Below, piece after piece: positions 36,520-58,100 of a DNA stretch of 64,000 nucleotides. Numbering within the stretch: the first letter of the stretch is position 1; every line of letters starts with the position of its first letter. Source of the DNA: Lepidodermella squamata (Eukaryota > Animalia > Gastrotricha); NCBI GenBank assembly GCA_047495785.1, contig JBLDXI010000020.1, positions 1,364,001 to 1,428,000 of the forward strand, given 5' to 3'. Position numbers and translations under genes: made by a program. The notes below the pieces were generated by a model. It saw nothing but the letters and a program-made list of their open reading frames with translations. It did not search any database and was not told the origin of the DNA.

Positions 36520-39500
36520 CTATTTCTGTCGAGTGCCGTTTTTCGAATCTTGCTGAATAATACTCACAGTGTAATTAACCGACTGTGAAGTTGAATACAT
36601 GCGCAAAGCTTCTTTCACCGAGAATCTCAGTAAATGAGCCGCAGCGCGTATGTTTCGCTCACATTATTGCAGGGCGTACCACCTCGGATTGACGATGGCG
36701 GTCCGCGAGCCTTTGATATCATTAAAATCAATAGGAGAAACAGACTCTTTGCTGAATAATTTGAAAAAAAAACATTCTAATTGGGGACAGATTTTTGGGA
36801 CAGAAATTGTTACCTGCGTTTGCCAGGGGGTAGAGCGTATTTATACAAAACGACGCCCAATCCAATTAGCAACGCAAGGCCTCCAATGCCACCTATAACG
36901 CCACCAATTATAGCCTGAATACAAACAAACTCATTTAACGATTTAACGATTAGAATGAAAAGCCATCCTTACAGGTGTATTGCCACAAGCAGCTCCGGAG
37001 CAAACAGCGGTTGAAGTTACGGTGACTGTAGTTGACGTTTTACTCGTAGATGTGCTGGTAGTTGTTGTAGTTGCACTTGAAGTCGACGTATTGTTCAACC
37101 AAATTGTCAACGTTGTCGAAGAAGAATAGGAAGGAACCCCCTTCAAATGTGAGAGAATTGAAAAGACTTAGCCATTCAATCTGCAGATACTTACATTGTC
37201 TTTGGCTTGAAGCACAATCGTAAAATTTGATCCAGCCGGAAAAGGCAAATAGTTGATAACATATATGTCAGATCCCAATCCGTTTCCATTCGGATAGCCG
37301 AAGTACGAATAGTAAGGGCCGACTGGGTAAAATACGAATAAGTTTACAAAATCACAATAAAGTAGAGAAAGATAATAACATGTAATGATGCGAAATGGAC
37401 ATTGATCAATTATTAAGCAAACGCCCAATCAATAATTTTACACAATGGACGTTCAAAACAATTAAAATGTATAGGTATAATAGGTTATTAATTGTTGCGC
37501 GGTCTAAACATCAAACGCACGAAAATTGAAACCGCAACAATACAATGCAATGCAGACACTCTAAATTTAAACACCCCTATGCTGTCATTTATTTGACGCT
37601 GAGAACATTTTCGTGTACCGACAATTCAGAACTTTCACTCAGAGTTGTCGCGTCATTTGAGAAACTGAAAACTGAGAAAAAATTTTCTGAGCGACAATTC
37701 ACTTGAACTGAATTAACATTCTGAAAATTTTCAGAAACCGGCCGGACAAATCAGAATGCGTTAATTCAATAATTTTTATTTACTAAAATCCGGGATCCGT
37801 GAAGTGACGACCACGATTAGGTATGTTAAGCAACAGACGCAATCGGATAAAAATTTCATAAAACCCCGTTACAAAGCGATAATTTTTCCTCGTAGGAATA
37901 AAGTGGGTCAATGACTTCGGAGTCAGTGAAGCGTAATCGAATCTGTCGCTCGATTCTTCGCCCACTGAATCAGCCCGATAAATTCTTAAACTAAGGAACT
38001 TAAAATAGATTTCGTGCGTTGCAGCTTTAAGCTCCTTTAATAGTTGAGATTTTTGATGTAGTTCCTCGGTGACGACATTCCGCTCAAACTGTCGTCGTTC
38101 ACTCAAATGTCATCCGCTCAAATGTCGTCACCGAGGAACTACATCAAAAATCTCAACTATTAAAGGAGCTTAAAGCTACAACGCACGAAATCTACAAACA
38201 AATTCGACAAAATTTCTCAACGAACTTAAAATAGATAATCAATTGCAGTTAGTAATGCACAGGCGGCAGGTCAAGCCTGATTCGCCATTATGACCTCGCT
38301 CACATTGAGAGCCGGCTTGTAACAAGACCCGACGGTGTGACCTCGTCCAAACAATATGTGATTCTGTTGTGGAAGCGGTGAGTCCCTTAACTTAGTGGAA
38401 AGCAGAAAGCCGTCAACACCATCATCATAGACTGCCTTTTGCCTTTGAATAAAAACTTGGTCCCATGGCTCACCCCGACTCTCTTATTTTGGGGCAGTTA
38501 TTTAGTAGATGTAATTGTGTATATTATTATGTATAATATCCATAAATTTCCTGCGTTGAAATCAGGGTAAAAAATTTCAAGCCACCTGAAGCATTGAGTT
38601 AGTTTACCCAACGGAACCTAACAGAGTGTTTTCATCAGCATTAACTTCCACTCAATAGTTTTGGCTTTGGTTAAGTAAGTGAAGAACAATTTGCTGCGGA
38701 GAGACTCAATAATTGAATGAGCTGTTATTGAATGCGAACCATGCAACTTTTGAATTTAGCGCCAAAAATGCAGTTTCCTAGGTTACACTTATTATTGAAA
38801 AAATATTTAAAATAAAAAATTACATTTATATAGTCAATTTAATTGTAATGTCCTTCACCACATGATTCCGTTTGGTTAATTATTCATAATTGACCTACTC
38901 CTTTTCAAAACGGTCGTGCTGTACGTATGAGCTGTTTGCTGTTCCCGTGTTTTGTTTAATTTTGACCTACTCCTTTTCATGGTCACAGCTCATTCAAAAT
39001 CTTATAATATCGATGCATCTTTGACATTTTTAGCTCCCATTGGTCTGCCATTGGTAGTTGCCCACGTGAGTTTTAGAAAATTATGCAAAAATCGTGCTAG
39101 TAAACATAGGTATGTTTCTACAAGATCTGAAAGGGGCTGGATAATCGGCATTGGAATCGCCATTTTTTCTCACTTGCATGGTGCAGGTGCTAGGTGCTCA
39201 TGTAATTACAAGCTGAAGTATATTGAAGAACTGATGATCAAGAGCCATCGACACGGATGTGTCGGCTCGAGGCGACCATCAAAGATCATCCTCCTTTCGC
39301 AGAGATCGGCTCTTCGGAGTGAACACGATCTGTAGGGCGTGGGGCAACGACTTGATACATTACTTGATTAGGTCGTGCATAATTTTTTAACTGCAAGCAT
39401 ATATTGAATTATGCAAAGCAATTAATCTCAATATCCTCAGTATGAACAGGGAAATGCCGTAGTTTTTACTGAAAAAGCCAAGTAGAGAATGTAAGTGCTT

Positions 39501-49509: not shown

Positions 49510-52138
49510 TTCTTCTCTAAAGAAAAAAACATTAACAATCCACGACTGAAGCCTGGCGATTCTATAACATTCTCAATTTGCTTTCATAAACAGTTGCTTC
49601 TCAAACAACTGACAACTGATTTCAAAGCGAACGCTTAATGAGTAGTTTAACGGGAAGAAGTCAACAAAATCGTGGCACCTTGCCCAACAACTAATCAATA
49701 TTTTTCTCTTTACTCTTGATTGCTCAACTATGATTAAAGCGGATAATTAAATTTATAATGATTTTTCACCTAAAGAAAATCCAAACTTGTAACTTGAAGA
49801 CTTTACTATAGACGCTAGGCTTGACTAGAACCGAAGCCTGGAAACTAAGCGAACAGCGAATAACGAGACTAATTGACGTGCAGTATGCTATTCGGAAAAT
49901 TTATGGCACTCATTAGCGTAGCTTTCACGTAGAACCTACAATCTAATAAGTGAAAGTATCGAGTTATAAATGAAGCTACTATCTGGCGGAAAATTGGAAT
50001 GAAACTATCTATGCCTATCTAGACTGACACTTTTAACCGTGAAGCGCGGAGAACAGTTTGTGTCGAATAGTTTCGACACGGTTGCGAGCCGAAATAGTCA
50101 ACTGGCGGCTGGCGATCGCCGCTGTATTTGGTGACAGTAGCTTTCAAGCGGACGATCGTATCGACAGCCGGCGGCTCACGATTGCCCCACTGTACGACGA
50201 GCATTTACATGTTGTCGCACAGAAGGAACTTGACGCGTTCTGGCGTTCTTTCCAGTACAGCAATGACGACACCATGCACGACTTACGACTTGAGTGGTGT
50301 TTCACTCAGCGATGAACAGCTGTTTGACACGGCAGGGTGTCCGAAATGTCTCAAAACCCCTAGCTTCATCTTAGAAAGAGAACCATGTCCCGCATATTTT
50401 GTAAATAATGTCGGTTGAAATGAGTGCCAGTAGTGTAAGAATGTTTAATAGAAAACTGAACGAGAATGACGCCCTAAAAGTGGAAATCGTCAATTCAATG
50501 CTTGAAGTTTTCACACAAAAGTTCTTCCACCCTATCGACCTTCCTCATGGATAGTCTAGTAATCTAGGATTTTCCGCCGCCCTGGAGAAGGTAGAAGGAC
50601 ATCTTCGACCTTCGGCCTCCGGCAGTAACGTGTGACCGCAATCACCACAGGAACAAGCTTCATTGTCCCGAATCCACTCAAAATATGGCGATTTATCGAT
50701 CGATTTTAGCCGGTCCTCGGATTTAATAAATGTTTATATATTTTTTATTATATTTTTATTTATAAGGCATTTAAGCAATAATATTTTTATGTGATTTTAG
50801 CAAAATTCGAATAAAGGTCAGCAGCAGTCGATTCTGCTGAAATCGTTGTCTGCGGAGTCTGGAGTCTGAGTCTGAAAGGCAAAGGGCCAAAGTCAACTGT
50901 GGCGATTCTAGCCAAGATCGCTAAACCAAATCGCATTTCAAAACGCATGTGCCCGCTCAAATTCTAGCCAAATTCCGCTTGAATGAATTGCGCTCTGAGC
51001 TTGGAGGAATCTTTTGGTGCTGATTATTGTGATTTAACCGATCATTCTAACGCGCGTCTTGCCTTCAAACTGGAAAATTATATTTTATGTGGTGTTGATT
51101 TGTAATGAAGATGAACGAGAATGCATAAGAAGCGCGCAAGTTCCCGGTACCAGACGGCGACACCATAGCCGCTCTCCTCATTCATCACCTTATCAACCTT
51201 AGAAATCAACTTAGACTTGACATTAACAACTTGCAAACGTCTTTGTGGTGCCGTCGTGCATTTTTGAACCAAAATTCTGCTGCCGATACGTTCTCTATGC
51301 TGCCGTTAAACATGCAAAAGTGCGGAAGTTGCGCAAGTTGTTCGGATGTTGAAGTAAGCCCAACCGGAAAAAGTCTGTAAGCCTGAAGGTAAGTTGCCCA
51401 TCTCTGCTCATGAGTCAGAGCCATGTCATTCGACTCTGCTGTTGTCTATGCTTGTGTAGACAAAGGCTGAAATCATTCTTAACGCCCATCAGGTCTCAAT
51501 GCTAAGAAAGATGAAGCTTTCTCAAGGAAATGGCAACCGGCGACCATATTTGGCCAGCTTGACAGCAGTTTTATTTTCCAAAAGATATAACGTAAATTTA
51601 TATGAAAAGCTATGTTTTAGATATAAGGGTTGTTTCCGGCGTACATGCTACGAGTAAAACGGACAACACCAGTTCAACGCCTGGTGACTTTAAGATGCCG
51701 ACGTGGTGTATGAATTGGCGTCACTCCGACGGACATGACATCGAGAAATAAAGAGCGACGTTCTTTACGCGAGAAGATTGCCAACGACGTCCATCTTTAA
51801 ATACTCTACATCCGACGGCTAAAGACATGAGCTCACGTTAGAAACGGGTAATATGCTAGCGATGTGGGACGAACAGTCAAACAGAACAACTATTGTATTT
51901 GACAAGTATCAAGGCGAAATCGGCGCCCTCAATGTTACACCTAAACCGTTCATCTAAAAATTATTTAAGAACCCGAACACAGGTTCTGCGCACCATGGCA
52001 CATCAGTTCCATTTGTTATAATATTTCATACGTATCATGGTCAAAGACAGTCATTAAACAAAATCATTCAATTTAATGAAGTAATTCATTTTCTATACAT
52101 CGTTGGAGCACAGCTGATTTCGAACAACGGGTAACCAT

Positions 52139-55100
52139 TTAGGTACGATTGGAGCGTGAAATGATTGAAGAAGTAGCGCGACCAGCTGTTTCAGCTAGAC
52201 CAGATCCAGTCGAGAAAGCTGCAGTTGACGATCGAGTCTGAACGCCATTAAGACGTTTCGATTCACCTTCAGTGTTGGGCGACACAGTTGAATGCCGACG
52301 GTTGAATGTGATGGGGCTGATGTCCAACATTTGCTCGGGGGCGAGTGCTCCGAAGAATTCATGCTTCAATGCCTCATCCAGGGTAATACGCTGATCTGGT
52401 TCGTATTCCAACATTCGCTCGATAAGGTCGAATAGCAAACGATGGCCATCAGCATCACATTGCTGATACCTCTGCAAAAATTAGATTACGAATGAATTGA
52501 TGAGCAAAATAAGTTAGATAGTATCAAGCAACAGCAAGCAAAAATTATAAAGCAAACATACTCGTAGGGGTTTGCACTGGGCACGGACATGTCTACCAGC
52601 GTCATTTTCGGGGTCCCAATTCAAACGGCCTTGGGAAAAGTATTTCCGTTTTCTGTAAGTTAGTAAGCGAAAACCACACGTTAATAAAAAACCCATGCGT
52701 TAGCATTAAAATGGAACAAAATAAATTTTATGTCACATCACTTCAAATCCCAAGCAATAACTTCGCTTGGCTTACATGAAGCGGTTGGCAGAAGTCATGG
52801 ACGTAGAGCCCCTCTGAAGATAGGGAGTCCCAGACAAGACGTCCACGGCTAATACACTCAACCCTGATTTTTTTCAGGTGTGATTTATTAATTTAATTCG
52901 GCTTCAGGAATCTGATTCTGCAAACTTACTTGGACCGCCGAGCCATTCGATAGGGTAAAGTTCCAAGAATTCTTTCCATCATTGCCAAATGTTCTCGATT
53001 GTCGTGTGTCTAATAGGTATGAAAAAATGTAAAATTCATCAAATGGAGTAGAGTAAGCGTGCTCACTTGAAACAAGGTGAATCCGGTATAAAGTTCGAAC
53101 AAAATACAACCAATAGACCAAACATCACAAGCTTGCGCCCAACCCAGTTCGAGAATTACTTCAGGAGCACGGTAATGACGCGTTGAAACTACTGTGCTAT
53201 GATGTTCCCAATCGAAAGTAGCTGAGCCAAAGTCAATTAGACGGACAGATGAATTGAGCATTCTTCGATAATCGCGCTTCTGCAAATAGAGTTGGAATTG
53301 ACGCCTTGAGAAACCCTGATCTTACCTTCTTCGCATCATAAACATTTTCATACTCGGTGTTGAGAAATAAAATATTTTCTGGTTTCAGGTCGGTGTGGGT
53401 CAGTTCAATTGCATGAAGAACTGCAAATAACAAAGCATCGAATCAAATAAAAAAGAGATAAGAAAAATGAAAACTCACAGCGGACAGAATAGCAAAGCTG
53501 ATATCCAATGTGACGAACTTGATCAAGAGCGTATGGGTGGTAGTTGTTATCTTTCAAAAAATCAAAGACGCTAGGCCCAAGAATTTCGAAAGAAATGCAA
53601 ATGTGGCCATGGAAATTGCACCAGTCTAGCATTTCGACACATAAGCTAAAAATCAGGGAATTAATTGAAAATCTGTAAGTTTTCAACTTCCAACTAACTA
53701 TTTATTAGCCGTATCTTTCGCCTTGATTTTCTCCAAGACATTGATTTCCAACTTTGCTGCTTCGCGATATTTGTCGACGTTCTTGATAATTTTGAGGGCT
53801 ATTTTCTGACCAGATCTAATAGATAGGGGTAATTATTTTCAACACGGGAAGCTCGGGTAATGCAATATATACCTCAGCTTGTCCTTGCATTCGGCAACTC
53901 TGCCGAAAGTACCTTCGCCCAGGGTAGAAACGACTTCATCTGGAAAAGGAAATAGCAACACGTTAGATCATCAGAAATAGAATCAATGTAAATGGAAAAT
54001 TCTGAGTCACATATCGTAATAATCATCTCCGTCTCCGAAAAAAGAAAGAAATTTCTATATACATCTGCCATTAATGACGTCGCCATCCTGAAATTCCAGG
54101 TGTCCATCAGCGTCGTCTTTTATCGGGCCTGCCGAGGAAGAAGACGCAGCTGTTGATTCTGGCACGACTGCCGTCGATGAGGAGGGCTGTGTGGTAACCG
54201 GAGCATGAACGGCGGTAGATTTTTGCGTCTGCTGGTTGCTACTGGACGTCACTTTTTCATCGTGGGAAGACGTGCGACGTTTATGACGCCGGTTATTACT
54301 GGTGTTTTTATGTCGATGGTGGCCAGAGGCGGTCGAAGAGGAACGCGACGATGTGCTTTCGGCTGTGTGCGCCGATTCAGATCTTGATTGACGATGGCGG
54401 GCCGGTGAGGAGGTTGATGAAAGACCACTAGCAGACTGTTTTAGAACGGCCCAGGTTACATACATATACAGACAATAACACACACCCAATCAAACGCCGA
54501 AAAATTCATTAAGGGAAAAGGAGAATTACGCTGACTAGGATTAACCATAAAACTAGTATTTTGGCGAACTGAAATATATCCCAATACCCTATTGGTCATG
54601 TTAAGCAGGATTGCGCGAGAGGAAACTCCAGTCACCTGCATCTCGACAAGGTATAACAAAGATTTGTTCCCCTTTTATATGGTGAAAAAATAGAAGAAAA
54701 TGGAAGAAATACCGGCCCCTGAAAAAATTACTGCTATTTTTTAATCGAAATAAAATTCTCCTTCCAATTAACATTATTCGGAGTTTCCTCACGCGAAAAA
54801 TCCTTACTCTCGGCCCAAATATCTGCCTACGAAACCTTTGTTGCGACTTGTTAGGGTTGGCTTGTTAAGGTTGGCAATTAAAAAAAACGAACATTTTGGG
54901 GTTGGCAATCGCGGCTCCTTAAATTGGCTTCACGCGGTGGGGAACGGGAAATTCCGGTACTTGCTTGATGCGCATCACCGTTGGTCGTCGGGGCGAGACT
55001 AGTACCTGCGGTGAGCGTCGACGAGGGGCTACTGCCCCCTCCATTCTCAACAGGTACGTTCACAGCTGTCGTTGAAGATGAGCTTTTATTTGCTGCGCTA

Positions 55101-58100
55101 TCATGGCTAGCATTATTACCCGACCGGTACGAATAATCGATACCGTAGTTAGTCGATGAACTCGGTGTAGACGTATAGCTTTTACCGACACCGGAAGAAG
55201 TAACCGTTGGAGTTGTTGGACTAGTATCACTTTTCTTCGTTGACGGGCTTTTTCGAGCTTTATACGATGATGACGGGGATGAGTGATTCGACGGGTTTAA
55301 ATACGATAGCGATGAAGAAGAAATACTGCTTCCATTTAGCCCGCTACTATGGTGATAATCATGATTGCTGAGGTGACTAGTGTAAGGGTGGTGGTAATCG
55401 TGTATTCGAGACGTTTTCGATGAACCACCATATAAACTGGAATTGCCCAGCTGGTCATACGAGTGATGATGATCGCCGCTGCTCGAGTACAGCGAACTTG
55501 GGTGGTGGTTATTGTTACTATCTTTTGACATTAAATGGCTCGATTTAGTACGACCAGAATTGAAAGAAGCCGACGGCCGGACGCCGTGATGAGCGTGAAT
55601 GGCCGGCGAGGTGGTCGAGTGGTTTGATAGTGGCAACGACGTGACAGTGTCGGTGCAACGACACAACGCCGAGGTTGGGAGAGTCGACACTGATGTCGAT
55701 GGCAAGTAATGATGGCGGGCCGATAAAATTGGCTGGGACGATAAATGCGACGCGGAAGACTGCGATTCTAGATAGTGATGGTCGTTTAACGCCGATGAGT
55801 AGTGATGCGAAGATAATGCAGGTGCGGAGCTAAGCGTGGGAGCGAGATGAGATCTCGAAGAGGTCGACGAGGCTGCACTCGTGGAAGTACCCGAATTACG
55901 GCGCGTTGTAGATGAGGATGAATCAGAGCCCGTTAAATAGCGAGACAAATCGTTAAGGTGAAAGCATCTCCCATTCGTCATGATAAAAGTAATCCAAGCT
56001 AGCACGAAGAGTGCGCGAAATGCATAAAAAAATCAACACAGCGCTGGTTCAACAAGGGCGGCAACAAATGAAAAAGTACAAGGGAGCGGCTTTTCAACGA
56101 ATCCCTGCGAGAACACGTAGCAGCGCCAACGCAGCGCCAGGGCTTTGCTACAAAAACTAGACAACAACCGTCAGTGGGTTATTTTGGTGTAGGTACGCGA
56201 TGCATCAGACGGGGGAAATCGAATACTTCGCAAGGTTTGTGTACGCGAGACGCTTAGCGGGCGTACACAACCAGAATGATGCGCCTTAAAAATGAAAATA
56301 ATAATAATAATAATACTAGTCATAAAGATGGGCGCGCTACAAGCGCGCACAAATAGGTTCGGAAGGGTAATGGGTAATAACAATAATAAGCGCATACGCG
56401 AGCGATATGTCTTGGTCGGAACGAAAGATATATCATGGAAATGGATTCGAAGCGCGTGCGAAGGGCAACAGAACACTGACGTTTCGAGCGCGCTTGCCAG
56501 CAACATCGCTACCACCAGGCCGGCCCCAAGCGATAGACGCGTATAATTCGACCGACCTCGGCACCCACATGATCGGAAAAGCAGCGCAAGCAGCCGCATC
56601 GCAGGAGGCGCGTTCTTAATCGCATGCCTAAACCATGTTATAGAAAACCTGGCTTTCTAGCCTGAGCGCAAACATCGCGCAAGGCTTCAGACAATACCGT
56701 TCTACGCCGGGTATTATTGGGAGTATAATATATCCATTTTGCGCTCTAGGGCCTGCGGATTGCTAGCGCGTTAGCACTATTTATTATAACGTGAAGTAGA
56801 AAATACCATACGCATCATGTCGTTGCCACAAAGCGTAAACGTGTATTATAAACATCTAACACGTATCATCCAATGGGAGGCCGAAGAGTAAAGAACGCGC
56901 AGCGGTGAGACTGGAGAGCAGTTCCTCTTCTACCGCTGCACGAGCCGAAACGTCTTCTTCTCAACCAGCTAATAGGAGAGCGTACATTGATATAGATATA
57001 TCGCTCTATATCGACGCTGGTAGTAAGCTATTCGCACCTTCTTTCGTACAGCATAAACAATCGGGTTTTACGGTTTTTAAATTATAAGAAAAAAACGCTT
57101 CCCGTGCCTGTCATAACATGAGTTACGGCAAAGATAATAAAGCATGATTTGGATTTATCCGCGGTTAGTGCCGACAAAAAGGGGGCGTTGAAAGGCTGCC
57201 AAACCGTAACAAGTCCGCTCTCTTATTTACAATGAAATACTTATATATTTGATAAGTATTAGCTACGTTCAAGTTCGCCAAAACAACGCAGTTTACGGTA
57301 AATGTACGTGAAATGCGAGCCAAAACTCACCGGTGAGGAAGCAGAGATTGAGCTGTGGTGCCTCTTACGAGCCGGGCTGCGCGAGGAGTCGGAACGGCGA
57401 TGGCGGCTACGGCTCCTCGAATGACGTCTCACCCTACGTTTTCGACGATTGTGAGACACCGGTTCGTCGTATTTCGTTGAGCGATAATCACGCTTTCGCC
57501 GGGGTGACGGAGATCGACGTCGCCTGGAATGATAATGGCGATCGTCTTCTTCGGAGTAGTCCGAGTCGTGGTGATGGCGACGAGAGCGATGATCTTGGTA
57601 ACCCCGTCTACGATGCCTTACCGATCGAGATATAGCTCTAGCGCGGGATCTTGTGCGGGATCGACTGGAAGAGTGACCACGATGCCGACTTCGACTTCTT
57701 TCCGCACTGGTTCTCGACGGCGAATCTCTTCGATGCCTCCGACGTCTTCGTTGACTTGAGCTAGACCGCCGGCGGTGATTTCGGCTATCAGATCGATCAT
57801 GCCTATATTATTAAAAAAGATGAGAATGAGTTTACACATATTGGTTAAATGCATATCTCCAATATCCACCATCTTAATTAAATCTTTAAGATCGCTATTT
57901 TTTTACCTAACAAGTCAATCAGTTTGTTCATTTCGACCCGTTTAAAGTTGTCTGAAGCTTCAAGTGACAAAAAAATATTCGGAATCTTTATATGTATCCC
58001 TGACAAAGGTTTCTTCCCGGAATGGACTTTGAATGGATTAAAAAACAATTAAATTCATGTTGTGGAAATTTCAGCGCTCCCGCTCCCGCTCAATTTCAAC

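What the first reader, a model, noticed from the sequence alone, without database searches (positions are those of the whole stretch)
52562..52863. Duplicated, mutually exclusive exon pair inside the CLK/LAMMER kinase domain
Seen: right after the [11 protein letters not shown] exon (phase-2 donor) come two homologous exons, each phase 2 to 0 with canonical sites. Exon A 52863-52776 (88 nt) encodes [29 protein letters not shown]; exon B 52652-52562 (91 nt) encodes [30 protein letters not shown]. Including both or neither shifts the frame. Established: this segment is the CLK MAPK-like insertion next to the LAMMER motif that shapes substrate access; exon B is the canonical basic form. Inference: a splicing switch producing an acidic-insert isoform of a kinase that itself regulates splicing. 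I do not know of this exon pair in CLK/Doa.
Basis: partly seen in the sequence, partly recalled or inferred. Interest (0 to 1): 0.78.

Follow-up and report, generated by a model that had tools for sequence, protein, structure and literature searches.

The report
Alternative exon pair in CLK kinase
This small invertebrate's CLK/LAMMER kinase, a master regulator of RNA splicing, uses one or the other of two tandem exons to build a surface piece of its catalytic domain, and the same undescribed switch is present in molluscs, ribbon worms and flatworms.

Summary
On the minus strand, exon A (52863-52776, 88 nt) and exon B (52652-52562, 91 nt) follow the [11 protein letters not shown] exon. Both have AG/GT sites and phase 2 to 0, and they are clearly homologous.

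Spliced contigs of one public run carry all four diagnostic junctions: LAMMER exon to A, A to last exon, LAMMER exon to B, and B to last exon. The two branches have similar contig depth, each about half that of the constitutive exons. No A-to-B junction was reported. So A is a used, mutually exclusive alternative, not a dead copy or a poison exon.

The pair is not peculiar to this genome. The same layout (29-codon exon first, 30-codon exon second, same phases) lies in the CLK genes of:
- bivalves and a gastropod;
- a nemertean;
- two trematodes.

Both versions are annotated as isoforms in Haliotis, Octopus, Mytilus, Pomacea, a chiton, Tubulanus and Hymenolepis. A rotifer, an acanthocephalan and a brine shrimp have one copy.

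I found no paper describing the pair. The swapped segment corresponds to CLK1 residues about 408-437: the beta-sheet of the MAPK-like insert, Trp419 and helix alphaH. The functional consequence is inferred, not shown.

Earlier scan notes report other exon switches in this genome, but not this one.

The parts
52930..53009 (-). Constitutive exon with the [11 protein letters not shown] motif. It ends in phase 2 before the donor GTAAGT.
   Evidence: Junctions from 52930 to both 52863 and 52652 in run X1.
52864..52929 (-). 66-nt intron upstream of exon A. Its 3' end is A-rich with a poor pyrimidine tract, so the acceptor is weak.
   Evidence: Sequence. Removed in X1 contigs.
52776..52863 (-). Exon A: 88 nt, 29 codons plus one base, first copy of the pair, net charge -2. 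It keeps Trp, GRL, G.YV and C.PL.
   Evidence: Joined to 52930 and directly to 52471 in RNA contigs.
52653..52775 (-). 123-nt intron between A and B. It is long enough to be spliced, since introns of 46-58 nt are removed in the same gene. It carries a TACTAAC-like branch site before B.
   Evidence: A low-depth unspliced contig covers 52677-52799.
52562..52652 (-). Exon B: 91 nt, 30 codons plus one base, second copy, net charge +5, canonical CLK sequence.
   Evidence: Joined directly to 52930 and to 52471 in RNA contigs.
52139..52471 (-). Last coding exon: kinase subdomain XI, a C-terminal tail and the stop codon.
53067..54435 (-). Six upstream kinase-domain exons: 53067-53279, 53326-53420, 53479-53645, 53699-53815, 53873-53939 and 54063-54435. 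They include the HTDLKPEN catalytic loop.
   Evidence: Spliced junctions in X1 and X3. Pkinase hit. ORF pieces.
54893..57807 (-). Two alternative N-terminal coding regions. One is a Ser-rich exon ending at 54893. The other is an Arg/Ser-rich exon ending at 57332. Each is spliced to 54435.
   Evidence: Loose ends of X1 and X3 contigs at 54435/54436 map to 54893-54922 and 57332-57361. ORFs.

Best explanation
Exons A and B are a true mutually exclusive pair in a CLK/LAMMER (Doa-type) kinase gene.

**What is made.** Each mRNA carries one of the two exons. This gives two full-length kinases that differ only in a stretch of about 30 residues, corresponding to CLK1 residues about 408-437. That stretch comprises the beta-sheet of the MAPK-like insert, the conserved Trp that packs on the LAMMER helix, and helix alphaH. 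The buried or structural residues are kept in both versions. The remaining residues differ strongly: B is basic and canonical, A is mildly acidic.

**How exclusivity is enforced.** It is most likely enforced by the reading frame. The exons are 88 and 91 nt, so including both or neither creates a premature stop. It is not enforced by intron size or by a strong RNA structure.

**Origin.** The pair is very probably this lineage's version of an old tandem exon duplication shared by molluscs, nemerteans and flatworms. In all of them the order is a 29-codon exon, then a 30-codon exon.

**Inferred only.** The two isoforms are inferred to differ in partner or substrate docking, or in regulation, at the alphaH face. 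Exon choice is inferred to be regulated, because A has a weak acceptor.
For: **Shown**
- Exon anatomy, phases and homology.
- All four exclusive junctions in RNA-derived contigs of run X1. Contig depths are 124 and 104 for the A branch, 109 and 103 for the B branch, and 241 for constitutive exons.
- The DNA arrangement is confirmed by a contiguous DNA contig of run X2.
- Frame consequences of including both or neither.
- Exon A alone hits only CLK chains in the PDB.
- A keeps 9 of 12 family-conserved columns but only 4 of 17 variable ones, hypergeometric P 0.008.

**Conservation**
- The same two tandem exons, with ag/gt sites, phase 2 to 0, 88 nt then 91 nt (94 nt in trematodes), lie between the LAMMER exon and the last kinase exon in Opisthorchis, Paragonimus, Ostrea, Pinctada, Tubulanus and Haliotis.
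- Both versions occur as isoforms of one gene in Haliotis, Octopus, Mytilus, Pomacea, Liolophura, Tubulanus and Hymenolepis.
- First copies of molluscs, a nemertean and flatworms form one clade with support 92/91.

**Structure mapping**
-, with PMC2667211.
Against: - RNA support comes from one run (one study), kept as contigs. Contigs cannot show rare A+B or skip-both forms, and depth is only a rough guide.
- The second RNA-like run, X3, has no coverage over A.
- Orthology of A with the spiralian first copy rests on position, length and the place of the one-residue indel. The tree puts A on a long branch beside the flatworm second copies. AU tests cannot decide: p is 0.32 for A and 0.35 for B when each is forced into the first-copy clade.
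- In other phyla the first copy is the conserved one. Here the first copy is the divergent one.
- No close relative of this organism was found, so purifying selection on A could not be measured.
- No functional data exist for either isoform.
Confidence: 0.85

Rival explanations
1. Exon A is a poison or regulatory exon. Its inclusion together with B shifts the frame and sends the mRNA to decay, tuning CLK levels, and it encodes no used protein segment.
For: - A plus B gives a stop 17 codons into B.
- A has a weak acceptor.
- CLK genes are known to self-regulate by unproductive splicing (general knowledge; poison transcripts are discussed in PMC12795684).
Against: - A is joined directly to the last exon, skipping B, at a contig depth similar to the B branch.
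- That form is in frame through the whole kinase domain.
- A keeps the CLK structural residues.
- No A-to-B junction was reported.
Confidence: 0.05
2. The pair arose by an independent, lineage-specific duplication of the canonical exon in this animal's ancestors. It only resembles the mollusc, nemertean and flatworm pair by convergence.
For: - The tree does not place A with the spiralian first copies, and AU tests are indecisive.
- Here the first copy is the divergent one, unlike in other phyla.
- A partial independent duplicate of the same segment exists in Artemia, so this exon does duplicate recurrently.
Against: - The window shares with four bilaterian groups the same order (shorter exon first), the same lengths (88 and 91 nt), and the same phases.
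- It shares the same place of the one-residue difference: six versus seven residues before GRL.
- It also shares a non-basic versus basic first and last residue.
- If earlier notes are right that this is a gastrotrich, parsimony favours inheritance.
Confidence: 0.2
3. The two forms come from two alleles or two near-identical gene copies, one carrying A and one carrying B, rather than from alternative splicing of one pre-mRNA.
For: X1 shows a roughly 42% synonymous variant at 52968 in the flanking exon, so the sample is polymorphic or pooled.
Against: - Both exons lie in tandem on one DNA contig in the window and in run X2, with no differences.
- The junctions skip exactly the other exon plus its introns, 304 and 277 nt, at GT..AG sites.
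- tblastn finds no other copy in the window.
Confidence: 0.02

Closest known systems
The same CLK exon pair as annotated, but apparently undescribed, in other spiralians. Examples: Haliotis rufescens, Octopus sinensis, Pomacea canaliculata, Liolophura sinensis and Tubulanus polymorphus RefSeq isoforms, and Hymenolepis diminuta VUZ52947.1/VUZ52946.1.
   Same: - Same gene family.
- Same position after the LAMMER exon and same phases.
- First exon of 29 codons and second of 30 codons.
- One-or-the-other usage in annotated isoforms.
   Different: - Here the first copy has lost the conserved T-x-F-F-W/Y-H-G start and several basic residues, and it is net acidic.
- In molluscs both copies stay close to the canonical sequence.
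- In the nemertean and the tapeworm it is the second copy that has diverged.
Mutually exclusive exons in other CMGC kinases, such as JNK (MAPK8-10) exons 6a/6b and p38alpha CSBP1/CSBP2. This comparison is from my own knowledge and was not tested here.
   Same: Tandem duplicated exons inside the C-lobe of a CMGC kinase that swap a surface element and give isoforms with different partner preference.
   Different: A different kinase family and a different structural element. Here it is the MAPK-like insert sheet plus the CLK-specific helix alphaH.
Known CLK/Doa alternative splicing: CLK1 exon 4 skipping, which gives a truncated inactive form (my own knowledge, not tested or read here), and Doa / MADD-3 alternative N-termini (PMC12795684). 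Doa is also listed among Drosophila genes with mutually exclusive exons (PMC3303723).
   Same: - A splicing-regulating kinase is itself alternatively spliced.
- This gene also has two alternative N-terminal regions.
   Different: - Those events change the N-terminus or truncate the protein. This one swaps a piece of the catalytic domain and keeps the frame.
- I could not establish which Doa exons PMC3303723 refers to.
- The arthropod loci and proteins examined have a single copy of this segment.

Membership tests
CLK / LAMMER (Doa-type) dual-specificity kinase | [11 protein letters not shown] signature in helix alphaG | tested here: met
   An exact [11 protein letters not shown] is encoded at 53009-52930.
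CLK / LAMMER (Doa-type) dual-specificity kinase | Protein kinase catalytic domain with HTD in place of HRD in the catalytic loop | tested here: met
   - Pkinase hit at E 7e-16.
- [10 protein letters not shown] in the exon at 53420-53326.
- HTD is given as the CLK hallmark in PMC2667211.
CLK / LAMMER (Doa-type) dual-specificity kinase | MAPK-like insert followed by the conserved Trp and helix alphaH | tested here: met
   Both exon versions align to CLK1 408-437 or CLK3 403-432 and keep the Trp.
CLK / LAMMER (Doa-type) dual-specificity kinase | Arg/Ser-rich disordered N-terminus | tested here: met
   The RS-rich ORF 57807-57262 is joined through 57332 to 54435 in RNA contigs.
Mutually exclusive exon pair from tandem exon duplication | Adjacent exons that are homologous, with the same phases and similar length | tested here: met
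   - 88 and 91 nt, phase 2 to 0.
- 12 of 30 residues identical.
- 0 of 5000 shuffles reach the alignment score.
Mutually exclusive exon pair from tandem exon duplication | Each exon is spliced directly to both constitutive neighbours in mRNA | tested here: met
   Four junctions in run X1.
Mutually exclusive exon pair from tandem exon duplication | Transcripts with both or neither exon are absent or rare | tested here: inconclusive
   No A-to-B or skip-both junction was reported. But the runs are kept as contigs, which drop rare forms. Both forms would be out of frame.
Mutually exclusive exon pair from tandem exon duplication | The pair is conserved in other species | tested here: met
   - Six other genomes from three phyla carry the pair.
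- Both versions appear as isoforms in seven taxa.
Base-pairing (docking/selector) controlled exon cluster | Stable or conserved intronic RNA pairing that selects one exon | tested here: not met
   - The fold of 52940-52460 has z -1.33, and 11 of 100 shuffles fold as well.
- Only short, weak inverted repeats are present.
- Covariation could not be tested for lack of close relatives.
Poison exon | Inclusion of the exon by itself introduces a premature stop | tested here: not met
   LAMMER exon plus A plus last exon reads in frame to the normal stop.

The most novel reading that the evidence does not exclude
The A/B choice is an ancient isoform switch, predating the split of molluscs, nemerteans and flatworms. 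It gives the CLK splicing kinase two alternative alphaH / MAPK-insert surfaces and hence two substrate or partner repertoires. The choice is itself controlled by CLK activity through SR-protein-dependent recognition of the weak acceptor of one copy. CLK activity is known to depend on temperature, so this would form a feedback loop in a master splicing regulator.
Probability: 0.2. Interest if true: 0.75.

Novelty: new member of a known kind. Interest (0 to 1): 0.55.

Why it matters
CLK kinases set the phosphorylation state of SR proteins and thereby global splice-site choice. Their kinase domain is usually treated as invariant within a gene. A recent family-wide survey (PMC12795684) counts molluscs as having a single CLK and does not mention exon-level duplication.

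A conserved switch that swaps the element covering the SRPK-type docking groove would mean that many spiralians run two biochemically distinct CLKs from one gene.

This genome offers the most contrasted pair, basic versus acidic. Both forms appear to be used at similar levels in the one run available, so it is a convenient case for testing what the alphaH face does.

Tried and rejected
1. **RNA structure as the exclusivity mechanism.** The fold z-score is -1.33 and only weak inverted repeats are present. Rejected as unsupported.
2. **Steric exclusion by a short intron.** The A-B intron is 123 nt, while 46-58 nt introns are spliced in the same gene. Rejected.
3. **U12/U2 incompatibility.** All donors are GTAAG or GTATG type with AG acceptors. 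Rejected.
4. **A third hidden copy, or a second last exon as in molluscs.** None in the window.
5. **Close relatives of this organism in metagenome contigs.** The last exon as query gave nothing. With a conserved exon as query, the 80 loci kept held only distant CLKs and no A-like exon.
6. **Sequence-based assignment of A and B to the spiralian first or second copy.** Unresolved because of long branches.
7. **Literature searches** for a described CLK/Doa/LAMMER mutually exclusive exon in the kinase domain. These gave only a list entry for Drosophila Doa (PMC3303723) without exon details.
8. I did not model the window's two isoforms, and I did not search for exon A-like isoforms among full-length proteins. 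A spliced protein has no reference here and would have had to be typed.

Full report
**1. Observation**

Reading the minus strand shows a CLK/LAMMER kinase gene.
- The exon at 53009-52930 encodes [16 protein letters not shown]... and ends with two bases of a Lys codon before GTAAGT.
- Two candidate exons follow. Exon A is 52863-52776 (88 nt) and exon B is 52652-52562 (91 nt).
- Each is preceded by AG and followed by GT. Each supplies the third base of the Lys codon and ends in phase 0.
- The last coding exon starts at 52471.
- The intervening introns are 66, 123 and 90 nt.

A and B share 12 of 30 residues. Their BLOSUM62 global score is 45, against -15 +/- 8 for 5000 shuffles, none of which reached it. 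Exon A alone, at 29 residues, retrieves only CLK1, CLK2 and CLK3 chains from the whole PDB, best E 0.008. Exon B does so at E 1e-7.

Including both exons creates a stop 17 codons into B. Including neither creates a stop 35 codons into the last exon. Net charge is -2 for A and +5 for B. tblastn finds no further copy in the window.

**2. Is exon A used?**

Laid on 52000-54500, they gave the following.

Run X1 (coded organism A, 2015; 36 of its 38 laid contigs at least 99% identical) carries spliced junctions with GT..AG ends at nine introns of this gene, so its contigs derive from RNA. Four of these junctions bear on the finding.

| Junction | Meaning | Skips | Contig depth |
|---|---|---|---|
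| 52930 to 52863 | LAMMER exon to A | 66 nt | 124 |
| 52776 to 52471 | A to last exon, skipping B | 304 nt | 104 |
| 52930 to 52652 | LAMMER exon to B, skipping A | 277 nt | 109 |
| 52562 to 52471 | B to last exon | 90 nt | 103 |

Constitutive exons lie on contigs of depth about 241, so the two branches add up to the constitutive level. The tool warns that contig depth is a poor measure, so I take this only as 'both are substantial'.

No A-to-B junction was listed, but contigs drop rare variants. A contig of depth 8.7 over 52677-52799 looks like unspliced precursor. Run X2 is DNA and confirms the tandem arrangement on one contig without differences. Run X3 has too little coverage to speak about A.

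Exon A is therefore a real coding alternative. The two exons are used one at a time in the abundant mRNAs.

**3. How exclusivity is probably kept**

- The A-B intron (123 nt) is well above the 46-58 nt introns that are removed in the same gene, so steric hindrance is unlikely.
- All sites are ordinary GT-AG.
- Folding 52940-52460 gives z -1.33, and 11 of 100 shuffles fold as well. Only short weak inverted repeats are present.
- The remaining mechanism is the frame. Neither 88 nor 91 nt is a multiple of three, so both-or-neither products are truncated and probably degraded. This is inferred, not shown.
- Exon A has an A-rich, pyrimidine-poor acceptor. B has a TACTAAC-like branch site and a good tract. 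A therefore probably needs activation. This also is an inference.

**4. The pair is old and widespread**

A HMMER search of 1.84 billion representatives with the exon 53279-53067 gave 150 CLKs. Flatworm CLKs with identical flanks fell into two classes that differ only in this segment. Hymenolepis diminuta has both as two annotated proteins of 703 and 704 residues on one contig.

Genomic loci show both versions in tandem between the LAMMER exon and the last kinase exon in six species:
- Opisthorchis felineus (L001) and Paragonimus (L002);
- Ostrea edulis (L005) and Pinctada (L007);
- the nemertean Tubulanus polymorphus (L088) and Haliotis rufescens (L089).

In every case the first exon has 29 codons (88 nt) and the second has 30 (91 nt; 31 codons in trematodes). 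All have ag/gt sites and phase 2 to 0.

Cluster members show both versions as isoforms of one gene in Haliotis, Octopus, Mytilus, Pomacea, the chiton Liolophura, Tubulanus and Hymenolepis. These isoforms often differ by exactly one residue in length.

A rotifer (Adineta, L003) and an acanthocephalan (L004) have a single copy. So does Artemia (L006), which also carries a partial remnant of a second copy. Insect, spider and vertebrate proteins in the sample also show one version.

**5. Is the window's pair the same pair?**

For shared origin:
- The order is the same, with the shorter exon first.
- The lengths are the same, 88 and 91 nt, and the phases are the same.
- The one-residue difference lies at the same place: six versus seven residues before G-R-L.
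- The second copy starts with a K-x-K-Y-F motif.
- The first and last residues are non-basic in the first copy and basic in the second.

Against, or undecided:
- In a 30-column tree the first copies of molluscs, the nemertean and flatworms form one clade (92/91).
- Window A sits on a long branch next to the flatworm second copies. The tool flags this join as a likely long-branch artefact.
- AU tests reject neither A (p 0.32) nor B (p 0.35) when each is forced into the first-copy clade.
- Here the first copy is the divergent one, whereas elsewhere the first copy is the better conserved.

I put about 0.7 to 0.8 on common origin and about 0.2 on an independent duplication.

Earlier notes of this scan suggest the genome is a gastrotrich, probably Lepidodermella squamata. 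I did not verify this. If it is true, inheritance from a common ancestor with flatworms and molluscs is the parsimonious reading.

**6. What the swapped segment is**

The alignment to full-length CLK1 puts exon B at residues 408-437. According to Bullock et al. 2009 (PMC2667211):
- CLK1 residues 400-432 form the MAPK-like insertion;
- residues 409-418 form a two-strand sheet;
- Trp419 is strictly conserved and packs on the Ala of the LAMMER helix;
- residues 424-432 form helix alphaH, unique to CLKs, which buries the LAMMER helix and covers the groove that SRPK1 uses to dock RS substrates.

Against 36 CLK segments, exon A keeps 9 of the 12 columns that are at least 85% conserved: Gly, Leu, Trp, Asp, Gly, Tyr, Val, Cys and Leu. 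It keeps only 4 of 17 variable columns (hypergeometric P 0.008). It replaces the two Arg of the G-R-Y-V-R motif and the basic residues at both ends.

This is the pattern expected of a folded, functional variant with a remodelled surface, not of a decaying copy. That the two isoforms differ in docking, regulation or localisation is inference. No assay or model of the window's proteins was possible here.

**7. Comparison with what is known**

- Mutually exclusive exons from tandem duplication are a well-known kind. Other CMGC kinases (JNK, p38alpha) use them in the C-lobe; this is my own knowledge and was not tested here.
- For CLKs, the literature I could search describes N-terminal alternatives (PMC12795684); the truncating exon skip (CLK1 exon 4) is from my own knowledge. 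It notes that the MAPK-like insertion is a hotspot of variation holding a conserved splice site (PMC12795684). That paper counts molluscs as single-copy and does not mention an exon pair.
- PMC3303723 lists Drosophila Doa among genes with mutually exclusive exons. I could not establish which exons it means, and the arthropod sequences I examined have one version of this segment.
- Five searches found no description of this pair.

It is thus annotated in databases but, as far as I can tell, undescribed. It is a new member of a known kind, and the window carries its most charge-contrasted version.

**8. Verdict**

- Observation confirmed.
- Interpretation supported.
- The main addition is that the switch is shared by at least three other phyla.
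- Interest is moderate. It is a clean, conserved, testable isoform switch in a master splicing regulator, but of a familiar mechanistic type and without functional data.

Noticed in passing
window 54435, 54893 and 57332 (minus strand): The exon that begins at 54435 is joined in RNA contigs to two different upstream exons. One ends at 54893 (a 1.1-kb Ser-rich ORF, 56032-54893). The other ends at 57332 (an Arg/Ser-rich ORF, 57807-57332). The gene therefore also makes alternative N-terminal regions, as Doa and MADD-3 do.
   Followed up: partly
window 52968: In run X1 about 42% of contig depth carries a synonymous change (ATT to ATC, Ile) inside the LAMMER motif exon. This is probably a polymorphism in a pooled or heterozygous sample.
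   Followed up: no
L089:72536-72637 and 75127-75231; L005:33301-33420 and 36824-36928: Molluscs also carry two alternative versions of the next (last) kinase exon. One is followed by a long tail and the other is a short R-Y-I..D-P type end. In annotated isoforms of Octopus, Haliotis and Liolophura these combine with either version of the exon pair. The window has only one last exon.
   Followed up: partly
L006:52764-52817 (Artemia franciscana): A partial second copy of the same segment (18 residues, 83% identical to the used one) lies in the intron just downstream. It looks like a remnant or an incipient exon duplication.
   Followed up: no
P0361 (Tubulanus) and P0153 (Hymenolepis): In the nemertean and the tapeworm the second copy has diverged so far that the Trp and the G-R-Y-V motif are gone, yet it is still annotated as a coding isoform. 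These may be kinases with a destabilised or very different alphaH region.
   Followed up: no
P0193 (Ephemera danica, 1058 aa): This annotated protein contains two identical LAMMER-to-end regions. It is probably a gene model that fuses a tandem gene duplicate, or an assembly duplication.
   Followed up: no
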